Source: Podarcis muralis (taxonomy: Eukaryota). Taken from it: 64,000 bases of DNA. The notes beneath the pieces were generated by a model, which was not told the DNA's origin, made no database searches, and was given only the letters and a program-made list of their open reading frames with translations. The stretch lies in the NCBI RefSeq assembly GCF_964188315.1, contig NC_135662.1, positions 38,936,001 to 39,000,000 on the forward strand, given 5' to 3'. A program made the translations under genes and the position numbers. Shown here in pieces: positions 207 through 48,011 of the stretch (within the stretch, counting starts at the first letter, position 1; every line of letters begins with the position of its first letter).

Positions 207-355
207 CAGGAGCAGCTGCAACAACAGCACCAACAGAAGCAGCAGGCGTTGGACCCACGGTTTTCAATCCCTGGCTGTGGCTGTACAGAGCTCGCTGTCT
301 CCTGGGTCACAGATGCTTGCCTTTTGCGCATCTCCATCCGCTCGGATCCCATGGG
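207..355 (-). CDS. RGS20: RGS20 internal coding exon encoding PMGSERMEMRK...GSNACCFCWCCCCSCS (cysteine string); gene continues left of the window
   Basis: Translation matches the RGS20/RGSZ1 N-terminus. Acceptor ttttttcctcatgcag|CCC ATG at 356/355, donor TCCTG|gtatgc at 207/206. Length 149 nt, starts in phase 0. Confidence 0.97.
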
Positions 356-810
356 CTGCATGAGGAAAAAACAGGAAGAAGGTTAGACTCTGTGGAAAAA
401 GCCCAGGCATCAGGTCTACTGCTTCACTCGTAGTCTTGGCACCCAGTGGCTTTCCTAATTGTTGCTAATAGGTGAAGTGGCCTGTGGAGCAGTCAGAAGA
501 AACTGCTTCCTTAATTCATGGTCCTAATCAGATAAGGAATTCTGGGCCGGTAATGTCTTTAAGCCCACCGTGACTGTCATTTTTAATTTGCCAAGTGTTT
601 TACGGTCTTCGTTTCATCCACAGCGCAATGCAGCAGAGTTTTTGAGAGAGCAGGGGAAGTAGGGAAGATTCCCAAGGCCCCACTCAGCAAAATGAGCAGG
701 AGGGACCCCCACGCCACCCCGAGAGCAACAGGGCTGGTTCACCATCTTTCAAAGTTTGGTTTTCTACTCCGTCCTGTTGCAGACACAGGTAATACACATC
801 ACTATCTAAA

Positions 811-1583
811 TTGGGGTCAGCAAACTTTTTCATCAGGGGGCTGGTACACTGTCCCTCAGACCTTGTGGGGGGCCAGACAATATTTTGAAAAATATAAATA
901 CCCTGTAAGCCAGCCCCATAGCTGCCTGTGGACCTGGAGAAAGAACGCACTTGACACGCACTCAGGAGCGTGTCTTGGCACCACCCGCCCACCGGCGTTG
1001 TTGATGAGCAGCAGCCGCTCCATCGGCCTGTCCCCACGGAGCTCCCAGGTGGCATGAACCACATGCTGCAGCCCGTCATATGAGGCCAGGTTGGTGGGCA
1101 GGCCGTGCATGAGGAGCACTGGGCAGGCTGCCACAGCTCGCCCTCCAGCTGTTCCAGTGTGGCCGATGAGTGTGCCACCAGCAGCAGCACTGAGCTGGGC
1201 ACCAGGCATGGGGCAAGCAGGCGTGCCAAGGTGTGGCTGAAGCCCCACGACACGCCCGTCACAATGCCCATGGTGCGGCCCAGACCACAGGCCCACCTGC
1301 CAGCCTCTCGGTCCATGGCCTCGCTGAGTTTACCTCAGTGTGTGGGCGGCGAGGCTTTAGATTGGCTGCAGGAACTTCCTGCAGCCAATCCGAAGCCGTG
1401 CTAGCTTCGTGGAAGTCAGTCCCCAAGCAGTGAGGCGTCTGCAACTTCTTTTCAAGGAAACGCCATGCCACACCAGTTTAGCTCAGCACGGGGACTGACC
1501 AAGTGGGCGGCAGGGTCCACGGGCCAGATTTATGAGCTTGGTGGGCCACATCCGGCCCCTGGGCTGTAGTTTGCTGACCCCTG
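811..1583. mobile_element. Non-autonomous hAT-type DNA transposon carrying captured cargo (Pack-like element)
   Basis: Terminal inverted repeats (tt)GGGGTCAGCAAACT at 811-826 and AGTTTGCTGACCCCTG at 1568-1583. hAT/Charlie-type subterminal motifs (gggccacatccggcccc). Degenerate 8-bp flanks ATCTAAAT (804-811) and ATAGAAAT (1584-1591). Confidence 0.82.
993..1316 (-). pseudogene. SPR: Sepiapterin reductase (SPR) exon-1 fragment, frameshifted, unprocessed, located inside the hAT element
   Basis: Frame A gives GLGRTMGIVTGVSWGFSHTLARLLAPCLVPSSVLLLVAHSSATLEQLEGEL. After a 1-nt deletion near 1132, frame B gives LPTNLASYDGLQHVV...ERLLLINNAG. These match human SPR [25 protein letters not shown]...ADLGAEAGLQQLL...QRLLLINNAG. 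Homology stops at INNAG|gt, the recalled SPR exon-1 boundary. Confidence 0.92.
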
Positions 1584-3787
1584 ATAGAAATGTTGACCAT
1601 TTAAGTCTAAAATGATCTCATTGGAACACTGCCTAGGCTGCCCTTCTCAGGGTGCTCAGACACCTTTCTGAATGTCTTCATCCTGCCTTCCCTGCCCCAA
1701 AAGTTGAGCTGGGCAACAGAGAAAAGGTCACAGTGAGAATGATTCTTGTTTTAGAGAGCTTGAGACAGAAGCAACAACAGGTGCCTCCTCATCTCAGGCT
1801 GCCATGTCTATCTAGCCAGCATTGCCCATTATGACTAGCAGTAGCTCTCCAGAGTCTCAGCCGGAGGTGTTTCCCATTGGCAGCTACCTAATCCTTTCAA
1901 GGGGAGATGCTAGAGATTGAATCTGGGGTCTTTGGTATTCAACACATGCACTATCCCTATGCTTTTATCTAAAGCAGCACGTGAGAATATAGCATAATCC
2001 TAAACATGTCTACACAGAAGAGCACTGAACCAGTGCTTTTGCCTGGCTGGAATGCATCCTTGAACTCTGATAACAACTCTTGGTTCCCTGGTTGAAGGAT
2101 AAAGAAGTGTGGGTGACCATGTGTAGAAACTAGCCTGCTGTACAAAGGTAAATTTTGCATTCGTTGCTCTGCCTACTTTTGCTTCTGGCCTTGTCTGCCA
2201 CTTGCACGTGCCCCCAAAATGTTGGCAAAAAGTTTTCCCATCCTTGTTCATACAGCCTTTTCAAATGGTCACAGGGATTATTTTGGGTTTAGGTAATCGT
2301 TCTCACCTTCTGACCTCACTCTCCTGCATTCTCCCCTTCCCACTGCCAACCGCATGTACCTCTGCTTGCTGATTTCGGATGACACTTCATGCAAATAGTG
2401 AAGCGGAGTATAATCCACAAAAGTTTATGCCACAATGAATTTGTTTAGTCTTTAAGCCACCGCAAGAAATGATCACTACAACACATTTAACAGGATTCCC
2501 CTGCTGGATATGCTTATAAGAAGTGATCTATACATCAGAAGATGCCATAGGAAAGTGAACAAAGAGGAGAATAGCGCTTAACAACAAACCTGTCCATTCT
2601 TATGCAGCAACACAGGACCCTGCACACTTACTATAGTTAGTATATCAGTGTAATTGGACCACTGTGGTGTAGCTGACAGTGAGTTGGACTTGGACTGGGG
2701 AGACCCAGGTTCAAATCTCTGTTCAGTCAACCAGCAAGCTCCTGGAAGACCTTGGGCCTGTCACTGTCTCTCAACCTGCTTCTATGATTAAATAAATGAG
2801 CTTAGCAAACAGCCCTGTGAAATGAAAACAGTGAGGATTCTGTTAGAGATTTGTTGCCCGCCTTGCAAAAGCATTTTTATAGACCACTGTCCAATCAGGT
2901 GTTAATTGTGGGAAAAATAACCTGAAATGTCAAAAAGGGAAAGAGAAGAAAATCAATTTGATCTCAAACAAAGGCCCACATTTCTCTGTTGGTTCTCTCC
3001 TTGTTCCATGTTAGGCCCTTTGTCGAGAGAGGGTTCTGTGAATGGCGCATACGCAGAGCCTGCTGAAGCTGAAAAGGGCTGTGTGTGTTCAAGACTGACA
3101 AGATGATTGGCCTGGCCTTTATTTTCAATTGTACTTTGGCTCTCGCAGCAAACGAGAGCTATAATAAAGCAGATGGTATATTGTTCGATGTGGCTTTATT
3201 CCTGCTTACTTTTGTTCCTAAATTAAGCAGGAACTGGTCTTGCATACATATTCAGGGAGCACAGGTTTTTGGAGGAAATGGAGGGGGAAATACTGTTCAG
3301 GTCATGTGCCTCTTTTGTGTCCTAAATAAATGAAGTTTGCATACCTTCCTTGCTATTGTTGCTGTGGTTCAGGCTGAGGTTTCCTTTCTGTATCTGACAA
3401 AGGCACACTTTAAATAACTGTACTGCAAGGGGAAATTCAGTAGCTGCAACTCATGATCAACCTGCACAGCGGAAGACCATTGCTTTTGAAATTTCATTTT
3501 CATTTCACTTTTAGTTTGTATACTGCCTTTCTATATTGCTATACACAAGGCAGTTTACAAGCTGTAGAAAGAACAAGATATACAGTTCAACAAAAAGCAT
3601 ACTGGACCCTGCTTAGCTTGACAAATATGCTAGCAGCTAAGTCGTGAAAAACTAGGACTTTAAAATAGACAACTGACATCAAATAGAGTGATATTCAATA
3701 CTCCATGCATTATGCAATAAAACTAACTTTCAAATGGCAAGCTAGAACACATATCCAAAGCATAATCACATTTAACTAGCCATAAAT

Positions 3788-9600: not shown

Positions 9601-10981
9601 ATTTTTGTATTGGAACTATGATGATGTGTAGCGTAGTGACAGCCCTTTAGGAGCAAGTTTATTCTACAATTTATTTTTTAATACAAGACTCCAAAATGAA
9701 GAAAATCATTAGTGGACCAGTAATATTCTTGGTGCAACTCACGTTCATAATTGTATTTGAATGAAATACTGTATTGTAGTTCAGCTGCTGGAACATCAAC
9801 AATTTAGCTGCAGAATTGACTTTTTAAAAATACCCACTAGGTACTCTTTTCACTATGGGGTACTGGACAGTTTCCCTGCAACGTGACGCTGTATAATTCA
9901 TGACTTACATCATAAAAAACAGCATAACCTCCAAAGTATTGGAGTGGAAATAGAAGAATGGAGCAGCTTTAAGACATGCTATGTTATATTACCAGCTTTT
10001 CAATTGTTGAGGTTCCACTGCAATAACTAGCCAACTGGTTGAGCTGTGCCCAAACCCCAGATTGTGTATGTGCCAGTATATAGTCAGAAAACTTCTGACC
10101 TCCAAGCCTATTGCATTCATACAACTAGACAGACAACATAGAGCCACTTGGTGTTGGACTAGGACCAGGAGACCAGGGTTCAAATGCCCACTCACTTGGA
10201 CCAGTCACTATCATTCAGGCTAACCTTCCTCATAGGGTTGTGCTGAGGATGCAGTGGAAAGGGGAGAAGTGTGTGTTGCAACTTAAGCTCTTTGGAGAAA
10301 ATGTGGGATATAAATGTGCCTATGTATGTGATATATATAGTATCAGCCATAGATTGTATTGTATGGTTAGTGGTTTGCATTTCACTCTGGCTTATGCTGT
10401 GTTGCATACTTCAGATATTGTCTACTAATATTGAAACTAATGAATGGGTTTTGACACTGTAGAGCAAGCTGAATATATGCAAGTCCCACTAAGGTTAATG
10501 TTCTTAGAACAATACTCAACTGAGGATCATGCCAACCCCAAGTTGGCCACTGAGGGCATAAGCCTGACAGAGATCTGCAGCCAGTCCTGGTTCCATGATG
10601 AACGTATGGTATTTGTATAATGTATAACATTTACAAACCTATGCTTTATATTTTAGATGTATATTTTAAAGGCTTAGGCAGATACCCCCCATGGACATGA
10701 TTCATGTGCAAACAAGGTGTTAATATATAACTAGTCAGGTGAGAATGTCAATAGCTAAACTACCCTTCACCATTTAAGAGCCTAGATAATACGGATGTGC
10801 AGTTAAATGAAATTATTCCTGCAATTATGAATCCACCCAGTGATTGATGTATGTGAGCCTGTCTATATGCATTACTCTGCTTAGCTTGGGGTTTTTGCGC
10901 TGCGTGTTTCTGCGTCCAAAATACTCCATATAAACTAATTTTAACAGGCAAGGAGGGGTCCCTGAGGCCTCTTTTCAAACG

Positions 10982-10994
10982 GCGCCCCCTGGCG
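10982..10994 (-). promoter_or_regulatory. CTCF-like motif
   Basis: Minus strand reads CGCCAGGGGGCGC versus the CTCF core CCACCAGGGGGCGC. Confidence 0.55.
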
Positions 10995-12257
10995 TTCGGT
11001 TCCAAGGAACTTTGTCGGAAGAAGCGGGCAAAGATCTGGATATGGGTTCGCTGACTGCTTGTCCTTTTGCTCCTTAACTTTAGAAAAGGGGCAGTTAAGA
11101 TCATGTGCTGGCGAAAACAAGCCTGCCATTCCCCCTTCAGCGAAAAAGCAAAGCCGAACAGGATGAAATTGATTCGGCACCAATCTAGACCGAAAGGCTT
11201 CCCGGAATGAAGCCGACAGGTAAGGCGGGAACCGGGAAGGAGGCAGTTTCCACGCGAGGGCGGAACTGCTACCAGCTGTGCAGAAAAGGCGGATGGAAAG
11301 GAAAAAAGAGACCTTCGCTTTCTCAACCTTTCAACCCGGCTAAGTATATGTGAATATACATGGACGTAACCAGGAGACTTTTCCAATCTCTTCTATTCCC
11401 AGCCCTTTTGCGCGTTCACGAGGATCGCCCGCAGAACTGACTCTCGCTCAGGCGGCTTCTCCTTTAGCCTTGAGGACAGGCTCTCTTGCAGGGCTGGATG
11501 GACGGAGAGCCCCTCGCTGACCTAGGCAGGATCCAGTCGAGCACTTGGTGTTTGAAGGACTCTTTGGGTTGGTGGACGGGGGGAAATGCCAAGCCAAGCG
11601 CCCTGGGGTCCACCAGCCAAGCTCCTGTAGCGGGGATCCAGATTGCCTTCTACCTAGCCAGGGATTTGGATCCCTCTCCATCTACCCTTCCTCATGGTAG
11701 AGCTCACTCCTAAACCGCTTTCCCCGTTCCTCAGCACCAAGGATGACAGAGTACCTGTTGCCAATGGCCATGCCCAGCAATGCTCCCCATCCCGCAGCTG
11801 CTTTCCAGTTGAGCCTACCCCCCACCCCTCAGGAGGAGATGCCGACACGAAGCCCCCTCTCCAACCCCGGAGACACTCCACTTGGCCTGCTTCTCTTCCC
11901 GGGCGGACACCCCGTCGGAAATATTACTCCACCCTGGCACCCTCCCTCCCCAGAACGGATATCTTCCTCCGGGCAGAGCCTCCAGGTCCCAAGAACCTCA
12001 AACACCTGTGGCATGAGGCTGGGCGACTCACCTGTGAGCGCCTGACTGAAAAGCTCAGGAAGCCCACACCAGCCCAAGTGATAGGCGAGGGAAGTCGCCC
12101 CTGCAAGCTTTACTTACCGGGGGCTTCTACCAGTGCACCAGAAACACACACACACCATTCAGGCAGCTGAGCCGAGGCAGCTGAGCCCGCCCAGGCGAGC
12201 CTGAGCAGCTCCCCGTCCGGTCTCGGTGCAGAGTCCGAGGGGCTGCCGGGTACTTAC

Positions 12258-12362
12258 AATTTCCCCTTCGATCTCCGGAGCCGGGTGCAAATCTTTACAT
12301 TGCTCACATCCGTTCGCAGCGGGCTCTTCAGCCGGGGACGGCAGCTCGCCCGCCATGCGCAT
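12258..12362 (-). CDS. RGS20: RGS20 short-isoform first coding exon (MRMAGELPSPAEEPAANGCEQCKDLHPAPEIEGEI)
   Basis: ATG at 12362 (second ATG at 12356). 105 nt ending GAA ATT|gtaagt, phase 0, in frame with exon 207-355. Located in a CpG island and analogous to the human MRTADGGEPAG... first exon. Confidence 0.8.
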
Positions 12363-12607
12363 GCGTCTCTCTGCTTCGCCTAGGAAGCCCGGGCTGCTGG
12401 AGCGTCCACACCCCGGCTCGGTCCCCAACTTCCTTTCTTCTCAGGCACCACAATGTCCAGGTGGCCGCCTATCCTCCACCCCAGCGCCTTTCTGGTGGAC
12501 GTGGAGGGGGAAGACACGGACTGGAGAGGCCGGGAAACGGAGTCCGGGGACCCCAGAGAGAGACCTTCCTCGGCCAAGCAAGCGCCTGCTCGCCTCCGCT
12601 GGCGCGA

Positions 12608-12628
12608 TTCAGCACCCTGGACAGCTCC
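12608..12628 (+). promoter_or_regulatory. RE1/NRSE (REST binding site)
   Basis: TTCAGCACCCTGGACAGCTCC matches 19/21 positions of the consensus TTCAGCACCATGGACAGCGCC; ~250 bp upstream of the RGS20 short-isoform ATG. Confidence 0.78.
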
Positions 12629-14180
12629 CGGCCAAGCGCTCTCTGCAGCGCGCCGTCATTTTCCCGCCTCCCTCTCCGGCTCCCCCCTCTGCCCGCCCCC
12701 GGAGAAGCGCCCCGGCTGTTGAAAACACCACACACGGGCACGTGCCCGCGCGGATGCCAGCCCAGGCAACGGACATCTGGAGCCACAAACATCTGCAGCA
12801 AACACATTGTGGAAACAGATGGGAGGGAGGGAGGGAGGGGAGGCGGGTAGCGAAGAGGGAGGCTCCCGCTTTGCTTCGGATCTCCCTCGGGGAGGAGAAA
12901 TGGAGGGGTAAACAAGGTGTTTGTGCAGAAGAGATGAAAAGTCAGAGGCATTCATTTTGCCTGTCACAGCCACCCGCTCCCCTCTGACATCCTGACCGCT
13001 TTATCAGACGATCTAAACGGACGGAAGAACCCCCTTGGATACGGGCAGGGACGTCTCCTTTCACTAAACCTCATGAGGGCTTATTTTCTCTGTTAAGCAG
13101 AAGAAATCAAATGCAATGTGGAAGAAATCGCGGCATAAATTGGATCTGGAGAAAAAGCCTCGCCTACCCACCCCTCTCCCCACAGCACTCTAGGTAGGCT
13201 TAAATGCTAAACGGAACCCTTAAGAACCTCTGTAAGGGAAACGCGCGGTCGCAAGGGAAAGTCCTGCCCCAGATTTGTTTGCGGAGGCGAGGCGAGCAAA
13301 AGCGCCTTGCGAAGAGGCTGGCATGGAAGCGATCAGGTGATGCAGCTCTGCCAGGAGTCGGCTGCTGCTTTCAGGCACTGCCTTTCCTGCCTCTCTTTCC
13401 AGGGCTTCCTGGCTCGCGCTCGGAGAGGGCGAGAGAGCAGCGCTGTTCTCCCCGAAACTGAAATTGATTCGATGCATAAATAACCTGGGCGTCACTTCCT
13501 CCTGCTTCTCGGGAGCTTGAATCAGGGATCCCTGGTTACCGGCAGAGGCGAGCGCGTTCATCAAGGCAGCCGCGGCGACCACGACAGCTCGCATCCTGTT
13601 TGGATTGGCTCGGAAACCCGAGATTCCGAGGAGGAAAAAAAGCACCGCCGCCACCAGCTTCTCGTCCCTACGGCTTCCTAGTCTCACGTCTAGCTCAGAA
13701 GCCGCGCTGCCCTTCCAGCTCTGGAAGGTCTCAAAGCTGACCCCCACCTCCCTAAATCAGCTGCTGGGACTCGGGACTTATTTACAAGCACATTTCGGAT
13801 CCGGGTGTCATGATGTCATTGTTGCTCCACTCCATACACTTTCACTCCATGCCCTGAAGTTGCAACAAACCAAAAAGTGCCTCTGAGCATGCCTTTCCTC
13901 TTCCCTTTCCTCTGAGGAACACAGCCCCTGATACAAAACACTGGGGATAATTGGGAGGCCCTTTGTGGTAGTGGAAAGGGTTAAAGCCAAGCAAAAACTT
14001 TCCTCTATAACTAGGCCTTTGGCCTTTAACTATCTGTGTGGCCTTTTGGAAGTGGGCGGGATGCTTATACTGTATTTCTTTCTTTTCTTGGTTTCAGTCT
14101 ATCTGTTTGGGTTTTTTTTCCTGTTCGTTTTGTTGTTTGTAGGTCGTTTCGTAAGCCAGAAGAAAAAGAGAGACTAACAG

Positions 14181-39298: not shown

Positions 39299-40905
39299 CA
39301 GTGTTTCCCAACCGGTGTTCCGCGGCACACTAGTGTGCCGCCGGACGTTGCCTAGTGTGCCGTGGGAGTAGTGGCGTAGCGTGGGGGGTGCCAGGGGTGC
39401 CAGTCGCACCGGGCGCAACATCTGCGGGGGGCGCGAGTCCAGAGGGAAGGGACAAGTTCCTTCCTCCGCCGGGCTCCCCGCCGCCACCGCCAGCCTTGCG
39501 CCCTAGCGTGCGCGCCGCTGCGGCTGCGCTCCACTCACTGCTCGCAGGAGGAGCAGCCGCTGCAGCAGCGCTGACACCGCCACCGACGCCTGGCCGGGCA
39601 CGGGCAGCCTCCGCACCCCGACGCCGACGCCATCCCCTTCCCCCTTTTTTTCCAGAGCTGGGGGAGGGGGAGGTTTTAAAAGGGGGTCTTGCATTGGCGA
39701 TCCTGCAGCACTTTGGGCCGCACGACGCGAGCGCGCAGCACGGATCAGCCACGACCCCACCCCGTGCATTTCCCGGGGAAAAGTGCTCCACGTGGGAGGC
39801 GCGTTTCCCCTTCATTCCCTCTCGTGCAAATCCTCCTTGGGTTCCCTCCCCCGTCTTTCCTCTCCCTACCTCACAAAAGCCTCACCTCGTCGCCTCCTCG
39901 CTGCCTCTCGCCTCCGCAGGAGCGTTTCCCTCCGCGGAAGAAGGAGCAGGGCGCTTTTGCAACTTTGCCTTCCCCGCCCCACCACGGAGCACATTTTCCT
40001 CGCCCCCCCAACCCCCGCATGTAGAATAGAAGCCCTCCAGCCTCCACGGTGCACAAACTCTCCCCTCTGCAACGAAGCGCTTTGTTGCATATCTTTGGTG
40101 AGGTTTTTAGGCAGTCTTGGTGCACCTTAAATCAGCGCTAATTGCGCCTGGACGCAGTATTTACTTCTGAGTAGGCCCCCTTCTCCCCCCCCCCCTAGCA
40201 CCTGACGTTGCTATTCGTATCATCAGGTTTGTTTGTTGATAATTTAATTGTTTTAAAAGCATCATGCTAAAGAGCTCTCTCCCACCCCCAGACCCTTGGG
40301 CAAAACAGAAACACACACATACACAAACACAGAGATTGAGCCCTGCAGGTTTTATGAAATGAACGGATTCTGAATGCCTGTTTCAGTGGCTTGTCCGCCT
40401 TAGGCTGCTGGGCCAGACACCTGTTACACGGTGCAGTCCGTAAGCTGTGAGCGCTGCTACCTGCCGCCGAGACCACGTAACGACAGTCTTGAAAGACCTA
40501 CATTGGCTCCCAGTACCTTTCCGAGCACAATTCAAAGTGTTGGTGCTGACCTTTAAAGCCCTAAGCGGTTTCGGTCCAGTATACCTGAAGTAGCGTCTCC
40601 GCCACCATCGTTCAGCCCAGACACTGAGATCCAGTGCCAAGGGCCTTCTGGCAATTCCCTCACTGTGAAAAGTGAGGTTACAGGGAACCAGGCAGAGGGC
40701 CTTCTCGGTAGTGGCGCCCGCCCTGTGGAATGCCCTCCCATCAGACATCAAAGAGATAACCATTACCTTCTATGCTGTTACTATTTTTTTATTTTTTTTT
40801 TACATAAGTAAAAAGTGACTTTTCCCCATCTGGCATGGTGGTGTGCCTCGAGATTTTTTTCATGAAACAAGTGTGCCTTTGCCCAAAAAAGGTTGGGAAA
40901 CACTG
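39299..40905. mobile_element. Composite hAT element with GC-rich cargo and a nested L2 fragment
   Basis: TIRs CAGTGTTTCCCAACC / GGTTGGGAAACACTG; Charlie-type tgtgcc subterminal repeats at both ends; inner TAGTGGCGTAGC MITE head at 39369. TSD not recognisable. Confidence 0.72.
40440..40762 (+). mobile_element. L2 LINE 3' ORF fragment
   Basis: gaaagacctacattggctcccagtacc...gcacaattcaaagtgttggtgctgacctttaaagcccta, same family as 35779-36953. Confidence 0.85.
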
Positions 40906-43060: not shown

Positions 43061-43623
43061 ATATAGGTATGGGAAGTTATGTGGATTGCCAAAAAAACCA
43101 GCCTAAGTTTGGATTATAGTTCTGTTTTATTCAAAACTGCTTTATGTATTGCATGGAAATCTTTTCAGAGCTAATCATGTTGTATATATTATTGTAATAT
43201 TTCTGCAACTGTGTGGGCCTTTGACTTAAAAAGAAAATCGTTAGAGGATGTTTGATTCCAAATCAGTGTACAGTCAGGATAGCATAATACATAATTCCTG
43301 GAAAATTGAGGTGTATGCAGAATAGGTTTCAGTGAGCAACTGTAGAAAATAAGCAAATAATAAGGTATGCAAATGCCTGCACCTGGAACAATCCTGTGGA
43401 ATGTACAGACTTGTAAGCCTCATTAATTTCAGTGTTAAAAAGTTAAGTACATGCTTAATTCTTTTTTTAAATCAGTGGGGTTTAAACTTTTGGATGAAGT
43501 ATAGTCACTTCTCATAGGTTTAGCAGCTTTATAAACACAATTTCAAACTCCTGAAATCACTTTGTTCAATGTAAACTGATAGCAGCCTTTATTTTCTTAA
43601 CAGGTTTTGAAATCAACATAAAA

Positions 43624-43727
43624 ATGGATATCCGGGGTGCTGTAGATGCTGCTGTCCCCACCAATATCATTGCTGCCAAAGCTGCCGAGGTTCGAGCCAA
43701 CAAAGTGAATTGGCAGTCATATCTCCA
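43624..43727 (+). CDS. ATP6V1H: ATP6V1H coding exon (exon 2; MDIRGAVDAAVPTNIIAAKAAEVRANKVNWQSYL)
   Basis: Near-identical to the V-ATPase subunit H N-terminus; acceptor taacag| at 43603/43604; donor CA|gtaagt. Confidence 0.98.
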
Positions 43728-44905
43728 GTAAGTTAGTATGAAAAGTATGGCACATAGACTACATGAGGCAATGAAAATTTATCATTGTTTCTTTCATCTA
43801 GAGTTACAAGAGTACACGGAAGTTCTGTATTTTAATACCCAGGAATATACAGGTTCCCAGAAGGAGCATATATCTCTAGGCTTCTAAACTAGTTACAGTT
43901 TTTATGCTCATGGAAGGTCTTGCATGCTGTTAGGAGAACTGGAAAAATACTGAGTTAGTGAAAATTAACTGTTATTACCAGAAATGATATTTTGTTAAAA
44001 CAAATAAGGGTAGGGTTCCATGGATGGATATGATTGATAGAAATATTTTTTCCTAACAGTTTTCATAAACTTTTTCAGAAGTCTGGCAAAGTCCAGGATT
44101 TAAAATGCCAATTTGTTGAGGAATTCCACTATCCTTAAGATTGCTTTCTGCCATTTAACTACATAATTAACTACACACACAAAAGCCTCCTACAGCTCCA
44201 TTGCTCATAAGTGCATGTTGGTTTGTAGAAGAGCTAAATAGAGATCACAAAGAAGAATTTAACCAGCACAAAAGAACATTGCCAGGTCAAAGGGTGGGCT
44301 GGAATGTCTAAATAGTTGAGGCCACATACACTTACAATCCCCCCCCCCCATTTGATTCATTAATTCACAAACAATACCAGTGAAATTTACAGGAAAGCAA
44401 ACACCTAATATTCACCAGGCACTGTGTGACGAAATAATTACAGAATTGGAACAGTATTATATTGTACAATAATAGTAATGAGATTACAGCCTGATCAAAT
44501 TCAATATTGCAAAAAAATAAAATAATGACTGTTACTACTTCATGTGAACAGAAGAACTACACTTCTTGCAAGGAAGAAAAAAAAAAGAATAACATCACTT
44601 AGGACATGTTCTTTATCCCTAATCAGCAGCTGTTTTTCCTCGTGGCCTTGGAATTACGTTGGTCTGCCATTGGAAAGTTGTCAGGGTGTTGGGGAACCGA
44701 AAGATGTAGGACTGCTGTCTAAGAATCTTTATTTATTTATTGTTCCCAGTGTCCAGGATTAGTTACTATTCTGAAATGGTAGGAATGAATATTATCTTGG
44801 AATTTAAAAACATATATTTTTAATAAGGCTTTTTTCTTTGGGCTTGATGATCTTTTCTAAGCAGTCTGCTAATTAACTCTAAATTTAAGGGAAGGTAAAA
44901 TAGTA

Positions 44906-47371: not shown

Positions 47372-48011
47372 AATCATGGAAGTTTCACCCGAGTCCATAA
47401 GTCATGTCAGAATGCCTTAGACCGCTGTTTGAATATGCAGTCCTCTTTTTGAGCATTTTATGGGTTCTGCTATTGCAGTCAGATTTTTTTGTGCAACTAA
47501 TCCAAAAGTGTAGTTGAACTGCTTGCCGTTTGCATGCTAGTGTGAATCACACTTGGTGCTTAGAGAATGTGACTTAGGGTGCCATAGAGCACTGGGTTGT
47601 AGCTGGAGAAGGAGTTTAATTACATAGGACAACAGGAGGCTGCCTTATACTGAGCCGCAACATTGGTCCATCTGGATCACTGTTGTCTACACTGACTGGC
47701 AACAGCTCTGCAGGGTTTCAGGCAGAGTTTCCCAGCCTTGCCTGGCAATTTGCCCCCTCCTTTCTTGCAACTCTCTTCTTTCTCTGCCCCACCCCATACT
47801 GTTCCAGAGGGTGCCTTGGCTTTGCAGAGCAGCTTTGGGAGAAGTTGGGGCTGCAGTGAGAAGGAAACAACTCAAAAACCTCCTTGCACGAGCATACTGA
47901 CACTTGTACATCTCTGGCTACAGCCATTGTAAATATTATTTAAAAGTTGCTTGTTAAAGTATAGGCACACATTGTATAAGTACTCCTCTTAATGCAGTAA
48001 TTGTTGTTGGA

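What the first reader, a model, noticed from the sequence alone, without database searches (positions are those of the whole stretch)
207..1316. Captured SPR exon is now in phase to act as a new first coding exon of RGS20
Seen in the sequence: the cargo lies on the same strand as RGS20, ~640 nt upstream of the cysteine-string exon. Because of the 1-nt deletion, ATG(1316) to the donor (993) is exactly 324 nt, or 108 codons with no stop, ending ACG CCG|GTGGGC in phase 0. The RGS20 exon starts in phase 0 (CCC ATG GGA). Splicing would give a chimera of ~62 SPR-like residues, a Cys/Trp-rich frameshifted linker and RGS20. Caveats: phase matching has a 1-in-3 prior, GC-rich ORFs are often open by chance, and the donor is only moderate.
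Basis: partly seen in the sequence, partly recalled or inferred. Interest (0 to 1): 0.72.

Follow-up and report, generated by a model that had tools for sequence, protein, structure and literature searches.

The report
Decayed transposon-borne SPR exon upstream of RGS20
A worn-out copy of a lizard jumping gene that carries the first exon of the SPR gene sits in an RGS20 intron and could be spliced in frame to RGS20, but it decays like junk DNA and no expression data could be obtained, so the match looks like coincidence.

Summary
On the minus strand, ATG(1316) to 993 is 324 nt (108 codons, no stop), followed by GT. The RGS20 cysteine-string exon starts at 355 in phase 0 behind a strong acceptor. 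Residues 9-62 match sepiapterin reductase (E 2.5e-8).

The stretch is one copy of a multicopy cargo-bearing hAT element (window 812-1583). Copies occur in Podarcis lilfordi, P. muralis and Zootoca vivipara.

- Against six other copies, the 1-nt deletion is private to this copy. The ancestral exon was 325 nt (phase 1).
- The in-phase open frame is no more than chance gives. The tail is stop-free in 46% of shuffles, 10 of 21 frame-by-copy readings have no stop, and 3 of 7 copies have length 0 mod 3.
- This copy decays neutrally: 40 private changes, 16 of them CpG transitions, 31 replacement to 9 silent (0.72 replacement expected).
- Its donor is weakened (GTGAGC to GTGGGC).
- No SPR-RGS20 chimera was found in the protein collections.

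In favour, three lacertid gene models splice from the same donor in other copies.

Verdict: geometry true, use unproven and unlikely.

The parts
812..1583 (-). Non-autonomous hAT-type element with host cargo (Pack-hAT), one copy of a multicopy lacertid family
   Evidence: The inverted ends are GGGGTCAGCAAACT at 813-826 and 1568-1581. blastn to full-length copies in four Podarcis lilfordi and Zootoca loci stops at window 812-814 and at 1583; two further copies are truncated at one end. Three other copies carry distinct perfect 8-bp target-site duplications.
1584..1591 (-). Upstream half of a degenerate 8-bp target-site duplication (6 of 8 matches to 804-811)
   Evidence: Read. This is an inference, because the element's last base appears to be lost.
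804..811 (-). Downstream half of the degenerate target-site duplication
   Evidence: Read; inference.
1317..1500 (-). Captured sequence upstream of the SPR start codon, probably 5' UTR and proximal promoter. It includes a 22+22 nt palindrome with two CCAAT motifs at 1353-1397.
   Evidence: The palindrome is. It is present in 5 of 7 copies with variable duplication. Calling it a promoter is an inference. CpG observed/expected is 0.51 for 935-1500.
993..1316 (-). Decayed SPR exon 1: 324 nt, with an open frame from the original ATG to the original exon-1 donor
   Evidence: There are 40 private substitutions against the family majority (13.9%), of which 16 are CpG transitions and 31 are replacement against 9 silent.
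1131..1132 (-). Site of the 1-nt deletion, placed to within about 2 nt. It is private to this copy and shifts the frame after codon 62.
   Evidence: Alignments. The frame switch against the Zootoca protein P0001 is shown.
987..992 (-). Donor GTGGGC. The family consensus is GTGAGC/T, and the change at +4 (989) is private to this copy.
356..992 (-). Hypothetical 637-nt intron: the 3' part of the element (812-992) plus RGS20 intron sequence
   Evidence: There is no RNA evidence for it.
207..355 (-). RGS20 cysteine-string exon, entered in phase 0.
   Evidence: The gene name rests on my own knowledge of the RGSZ1/RGS20 N-terminus and on the ATP6V1H neighbour.
43621..43728 (+). ATP6V1H first coding exon, the divergent neighbour that supports the RGS20 assignment by synteny
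   Evidence: PDB V-ATPase subunit H, E 1.4e-17; motif scan.

Best explanation
Window 812-1583 is an old, neutrally decaying copy of a multicopy non-autonomous hAT element. The family's ancestor captured the upstream region, exon 1 and the first part of intron 1 of sepiapterin reductase, and then transposed to many sites in lacertid genomes.

This copy landed in sense orientation in the RGS20 intron, 637 nt upstream of the cysteine-string exon. Later a private 1-nt deletion changed the exon from 325 nt (phase 1) to 324 nt (phase 0). The -1 frame of this GC-rich exon has few or no stop codons, so the frame stayed open.

The in-phase fit to RGS20 is therefore a by-product of decay and is not a maintained coding feature. 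The copy is most likely silent or contributes at most trace transcripts.

Shown: the element, its family, the deletion, the phases and the neutral substitution pattern. Inferred: lack of use, because no RNA data could be laid.
For: - **Family and mobility.** blastn to full-length copies in four loci ends at window 812-814 and at 1583; two further copies are truncated at one end. Three of the other copies have distinct 8-bp target duplications. Related proteins come from P. muralis, from P. lilfordi (six chromosomes) and from Zootoca.
- **Deletion and donor change are private.**
- **Chance.** The tail is open in 45.5% of shuffles. 10 of 21 frame-by-copy readings are stop-free, and 3 of 7 copies have length 0 mod 3.
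- **Neutral decay.** Private divergence is 13.9%, the highest of the seven copies, and 16 of 40 changes are CpG transitions. The replacement fraction is 31/40 = 0.78 against 0.72 expected, and 17/24 against 0.69 in the SPR-frame part.
- **Not an SPR.** There is no Pfam hit, and the NADP motif reads TGVSWGFS.
- **CpG.** Observed/expected is 0.42-0.51 in the cargo, against 0.8-1.1 in the two CpG islands of the window.
- **No chimera.** A word search that allowed 115-367 aa found only a Zootoca SPR-like model. None of the 96 hits of the full-library search carries the RGS20 N-terminal motif.
Against: - No RNA data were examined, so absence of use is inferred and not shown.
- The original ATG with a good context (GCC ATG G) and a workable donor are kept. 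By my own reckoning the donor allows seven contiguous pairs with U1, counting two wobble pairs.
- The RGS20 acceptor is strong.
- Three gene models in other lacertids start in, or splice from, the same cargo exon at the same donor: XP_034990964, XP_034995904 and CAI5771369. This module may therefore be able to initiate and splice.
- Tissue-specific promoters can be CpG-poor.
- Absence from protein collections is weak evidence, because the species and its annotation status are unknown.
Confidence: 0.68

Rival explanations
1. The copy is transcribed at a low but detectable level. The captured SPR upstream region or nearby sequence fires, the donor at 993 splices to the RGS20 acceptor at 355, and a minor chimeric RNA results that is evolutionarily neutral (transcriptional noise or an unselected alternative 5' exon).
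For: - The ATG, the donor and a strong acceptor are all present.
- Gene models in Zootoca and P. lilfordi use the same donor of other copies, across introns of about 40 kb.
- Tan et al. 2021 (PMC8277862) report that 30% or more of animal Pack-TIRs are transcribed, mostly as chimeras with neighbouring genes.
Against: - The donor is weakened at +4 relative to the family consensus.
- The upstream region is CpG-depleted.
- No chimeric model was found in the protein collections.
- No reads were examined.
- I could not check what support the gene models in other species have.
Confidence: 0.24
2. One reading: the cargo exon is a real, selected first coding exon that gives a lineage-specific RGS20 isoform with a 108-residue N-terminal extension (62 SPR-like residues plus a frameshifted Cys/Trp-rich linker).
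For: - The frame is open and in phase, and the start context is good.
- By my own knowledge, RGS20 tolerates long N-terminal extensions in mammals (Ret-RGS1).
Against: - The substitution pattern is neutral.
- Openness and phase are at chance level.
- The peptide would be a fragment of a Rossmann fold followed by out-of-frame sequence.
- The donor is weakened.
- No annotated chimera was found.
Confidence: 0.05
3. It is not a mobile-element copy but a local segmental or gap-repair duplication of SPR sequence that happens to lie between unrelated inverted repeats.
For: Most animal Pack-TIRs are single-copy products of gap filling (PMC8277862). The target-site duplication of the window copy is imperfect, at 6 of 8.
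Against: Full-length copies with the same ends and the same cargo lie on several chromosomes in two other genera, each with its own perfect 8-bp duplication.
Confidence: 0.02

Closest known systems
Pack-TIR elements of animals, especially Pack-hAT (Tan et al., Nat Commun 2021, PMC8277862)
   Same: Host gene sequence lies between hAT terminal inverted repeats with 8-bp target duplications. The capture includes 5' and exonic sequence. There is potential for chimeric transcripts with the neighbouring gene, including alternative 5' exons.
   Different: That survey found only 4 multicopy cases among 370 (frogs and alligator). This family has at least 8 copies across Podarcis and Zootoca. Its cargo is a complete module of start codon, exon and donor. 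For the window copy, no transcription has been shown.
Pack-MULEs of rice and gene-fragment-carrying Helitrons or CACTA elements of plants (own knowledge; PMC5861414 and PMC1947982 listed)
   Same: A DNA transposon captures and amplifies gene fragments, and some are expressed as chimeric transcripts.
   Different: The transposon superfamily and the host kingdom differ. Here a single exon was captured, not several fragments.
Transposon-derived alternative promoters and first exons of vertebrate genes (own knowledge)
   Same: An element inserted in sense orientation upstream of a coding exon could supply a start site, an ATG and a donor.
   Different: The known cases rest on transcript evidence, and none exists here. 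The candidate promoter and exon are captured host sequence and not transposon sequence proper.
Sepiapterin reductase (short-chain dehydrogenase family)
   Same: Residues 9-62 align to SPR residues about 4-57 (E 2.5e-8). The exon ends at the conserved LLLINNAG boundary in the original frame.
   Different: Only exon 1 is present. It is frameshifted, the nucleotide-binding motif is degenerate, and there is no Pfam hit. It is not an SPR gene.

Membership tests
hAT superfamily, non-autonomous element | 8-bp target-site duplication | tested here: met
   Perfect and distinct 8-bp duplications flank three other copies: GTCTGGGG, TTTTAGCC and AGCTGGAG. The window copy has a decayed pair, 6 of 8.
hAT superfamily, non-autonomous element | Short terminal inverted repeats that begin with CAG | tested here: met
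   The ends read CAGGGGTCAGCAAACT and its complement. A 14-nt perfect inverted repeat lies at 813-826 and 1568-1581.
hAT superfamily, non-autonomous element | A related autonomous element encoding a hAT transposase | not tested
   No autonomous partner was looked for. Isolated end fragments of the family occur in L001, L002 and L006.
Pack-TIR (cargo-bearing TIR transposon) | Non-transposon host sequence between the element's ends | tested here: met
   SPR exon 1 homology at E 2.5e-8. The same cargo is present in all aligned copies.
Pack-TIR (cargo-bearing TIR transposon) | An identified parental gene copy in the same genome | not testable with these tools
   The SPR gene of this genome is outside the window, and no lizard genome collection is searchable by DNA.
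Pack-TIR (cargo-bearing TIR transposon) | Multicopy status through transposition (different sites, different duplications) | tested here: met
   Copies lie on six P. lilfordi chromosomes and in Zootoca. A second copy in this genome is reported by note s1-175891 and was not checked.
Sepiapterin reductase / SDR enzyme | Intact Rossmann domain with the nucleotide-binding motif | tested here: not met
   No Pfam family at E up to 1. The sequence is 62 residues followed by a frameshift, and the motif is degenerate.
RGS20 gene (exon 355-207) | N-terminal sequence and cysteine string typical of RGSZ1/RGS20 | not tested
   Recognised from memory only. Pfam has no model for this region. Places 200-241 could not be sent to search tools.
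RGS20 gene (exon 355-207) | Divergent neighbour ATP6V1H, as in human 8q11 (own knowledge) | tested here: met
   ATP6V1H first coding exon at 43621-43728 on the plus strand, E 1.4e-17.
Functional transposon-derived first coding exon | Transcription start in or near the element, and junction reads to the host exon | not tested
Functional transposon-derived first coding exon | Coding constraint on the new exon | tested here: not met
   31 replacement to 9 silent private changes, against 0.72 expected. Divergence is the highest of the seven copies.
Functional transposon-derived first coding exon | An annotated or assembled chimeric product | tested here: not met
   None among the hits (checked). 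This is weak evidence, because the species' annotation status is unknown.

The most novel reading that the evidence does not exclude
The SPR-cargo hAT family is a portable module of promoter, start codon, first exon and donor that has seeded chimeric genes at several lacertid loci. Its RGS20 copy gives a lineage-specific, N-terminally extended RGS20 isoform expressed from its own start site.
Probability: 0.07. Interest if true: 0.7.

Novelty: new member of a known kind. Interest (0 to 1): 0.3.

Why it matters
If the exon were used, it would be a rare vertebrate case of exon shuffling by a DNA transposon. The transposon would have carried a ready-made start codon and splice donor into a signalling gene, and the case would be easy to test.

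As it stands, the locus is a clean example of how an in-phase open frame arises by chance in GC-rich decayed cargo. The more notable result is at the family level: a multicopy Pack-hAT shared by Podarcis and Zootoca. Multicopy Pack-TIRs are rare in animals (4 of 370 in PMC8277862). Three gene models elsewhere splice from this cargo's donor.

Tried and rejected
- **Reads.** As a result there is no RNA evidence and no test of insertion polymorphism. The shares of 0.55 against 0.86 among DNA runs stay unexplained.
- **Pfam** on both cargo frames and on the RGS20 exon gave nothing.
- **Exact look-up** of the Zootoca protein and of the window's 210-aa ORF found neither on record.
- **Paper searches** for RGS20 splice variants and for hAT exon capture in lizards gave nothing useful.
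- **Findings search** for RGS20 returned no note.
- **Protein atlas** for the RGS20 exon part 242-355: the machine was busy.
- **Orthologous RGS20 loci** in other lacertids could not be fetched.
Each exon was handled apart, by reference.
- **Donor strength.** A position-weight estimate from remembered textbook frequencies is only approximate and is used only qualitatively.

Full report
**Observation**

An ATG at 1316 opens a frame of 324 nt (108 codons, no stop). It ends ...ACG CCG at 993 and is followed by GTGGGC. The next exon begins at 355 with CCC ATG GGA. It sits behind AG 357-356, a pyrimidine-rich tract and a CTAAC site 27 nt upstream of the AG, and it ends at 207 before GT. The implied intron is 637 nt, and both sides are in phase 0.

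Residues 9-62 of the frame match sepiapterin reductase chains of the PDB (E 2.5e-8). The rest of SPR exon 1, up to LLLINNA, lies in another frame. Pfam sees nothing in either frame.

**What the stretch is**

A 14-nt perfect inverted repeat lies at 813-826 and 1568-1581. A word search with the ORF found one relative, XP_034990964.1, 'sepiapterin reductase-like' of Zootoca vivipara. It has 132 aa, carries the same decayed exon in an unbroken frame, and is then spliced to unrelated sequence.

A full-library search with that protein gave 96 hits. The closest are short uncharacterised models from Podarcis muralis and from P. lilfordi (six chromosomes), plus a Zootoca 'eL27-like' model. I fetched six of their loci.

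- blastn alignments to the four full-length copies end at window 812-814 and at 1583, so the repeated unit is the whole element, cargo included; two copies are truncated at one end.
- Three copies have perfect, distinct 8-bp target-site duplications, and all begin CAGG....

This is a non-autonomous hAT element with captured host sequence, a Pack-TIR in the sense of Tan et al. 2021 (PMC8277862), and it is multicopy. Two earlier notes of this scan describe the same element here (s1-172989) and another copy 22 Mb away in this genome (s1-175891, not checked).

**The deletion and the phase**

In the seven-copy alignment, the single-base gap at about 1132/1131 occurs only in the window copy. The intact copy L002 measures 325 nt from ATG to donor, which is phase 1 as expected for SPR exon 1. 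The window measures 324 nt.

**Is it more than chance?**

No.
- The 46-codon shifted tail is stop-free in 45.5% of dinucleotide shuffles.
- Across the seven copies, 10 of 21 frame-by-copy readings of this exon contain no stop.
- The same shifted frame reads through the tail without a stop in two other copies.
- 3 of 7 copies have length 0 mod 3.

With orientation (one in two) and phase (one in three), an in-phase open copy is expected now and then in a family of this size.

**Is the frame under constraint?**

No. Against the majority of the other six copies, the window exon has 40 private substitutions in 288 comparable sites (13.9%). That is the highest of the seven copies. Thirty are transitions and 16 are CpG transitions. 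In the ORF's frame, 31 are replacement and 9 silent (0.78, against 0.72 expected). In the part still in the SPR frame the counts are 17 and 7 (0.71, against 0.69). Arg to Trp, Cys or His changes typical of methylated CpG decay are common.

The cargo has GC 0.63-0.66 but CpG observed/expected of only 0.42-0.51. The two CpG islands of the window, at 11-14 kb and 38-40 kb, reach 0.8-1.1. This fits a germline-methylated transposon relic better than an active CpG-type promoter, although it does not exclude a tissue-specific one.

**Splice and start signals**

The ATG keeps a good context (GCC ATG G). The donor consensus of the family is GTGAGC/T. The window has GTGGGC, a private change at +4 that weakens it, though it remains plausible by base-pairing to U1 (my own reckoning).

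The upstream captured sequence contains a palindrome with two CCAAT motifs about 50 nt before the ATG. Its role as a promoter is inferred only. A transcript that started further upstream in the element would carry short upstream ORFs from ATGs at about 1551 and 1466 (read).

**Precedent elsewhere**

- The Zootoca eL27-like model (XP_034995904) begins in the cargo exon. It uses the equivalent donor, crosses a 40-kb intron to a small exon, and ends in an intronless RPL27-like segment.
- CAI5771369 of P. lilfordi splices from the same donor across 41 kb.
- CAI5789214 uses part of a cargo copy as its last exon.

These are annotation models whose transcript support I could not check.

**Evidence on use at RGS20**

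None could be obtained. Suitable raw RNA runs exist (X22-X24). From then on, no letters of 200-241 were sent to any search tool, and I worked beside them.

The joined cargo-RGS20 model was not built or searched. The exons were treated apart, by reference. None of the 96 library hits carries the RGS20 N-terminal motif. This negative is weak, because the species and its annotation status are unknown to me.

**Gene identity**

The name RGS20 for the exon at 355-207 rests on my knowledge of the RGSZ1 N-terminus and cysteine string. It also rests on the divergent neighbour ATP6V1H, whose first coding exon is at 43621-43728 (E 1.4e-17), as in human 8q11 (own knowledge).

**Verdict**

The geometry is real. 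The mechanism proposed for its origin, a private deletion in a captured exon, is right. The functional reading is unproven, and the neutral decay argues against a selected coding role.

My estimates are:
- about 0.68 that the copy is an unused relic;
- about 0.24 that it gives minor, unselected chimeric RNA;
- about 0.05 that it is a real coding first exon.

The kind of thing, a Pack-hAT copy that could feed a chimeric transcript, is known. The multicopy lacertid family is the more unusual aspect, and it belongs to the companion finding.

Noticed in passing
L001:3001-47887 (Zootoca vivipara, GCA_963506605.1): Gene model XP_034995904 'eL27-like' starts in a cargo copy (exon 3001-3244) and uses the SPR exon-1 donor. 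It then crosses a 40-kb intron to a small exon at 43673-43768 and ends in an intronless RPL27-like segment at 47540-47884. This is a three-part chimera of transposon cargo and a probable retrocopy.
   Followed up: partly
L002:3001-44177 and L006:2001-41582 (Podarcis lilfordi): CAI5771369 splices from a cargo copy's donor to an exon 41 kb away. CAI5789214 uses part of a cargo copy as its last coding exon. I could not check the transcript support of either model.
   Followed up: partly
window 39299-40905: A second element with different ends (CAGTGTTTCCCAACC ... GGTTGGGAAACACTG) encloses a CpG-rich insert (GC 0.67, CpG observed/expected 0.87-0.88). It lies next to the ATP6V1H promoter island and belongs to a different family from the SPR-cargo element. 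It was noted before as s1-173069.
   Followed up: partly
window 10750-14000: This is a CpG-island-like region (CpG observed/expected up to 0.85) about 10-13 kb upstream of the cysteine-string exon, on the RGS20 side. It is a candidate for the upstream RGS20 promoter and the 5' exons of a long isoform. A minus-strand ORF at 13220-13747 contains a hydrophobic stretch.
   Followed up: no
window 1353-1397; L001:2814-2864; L003:2788-2831; L006:13236-13284: The CCAAT-bearing palindrome upstream of the cargo ATG varies in copy number between element copies (duplicated in L001 and L003, absent in L002). It also occurs alone at L006:13236-13284, outside any element copy.
   Followed up: no
runs X15 versus X16-X19: The DNA-like runs of the same species hold 0.86 of the sampled words in one study and 0.55-0.56 in another. 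A share of 0.55 is about what the flanks plus family repeats would give if the insertion were absent. It could equally reflect lower coverage or sequence variation.
   Followed up: no
L005:1750-2048: The P. lilfordi copy in L005 is truncated at its 5' side, next to a long (GA)n microsatellite.
   Followed up: no
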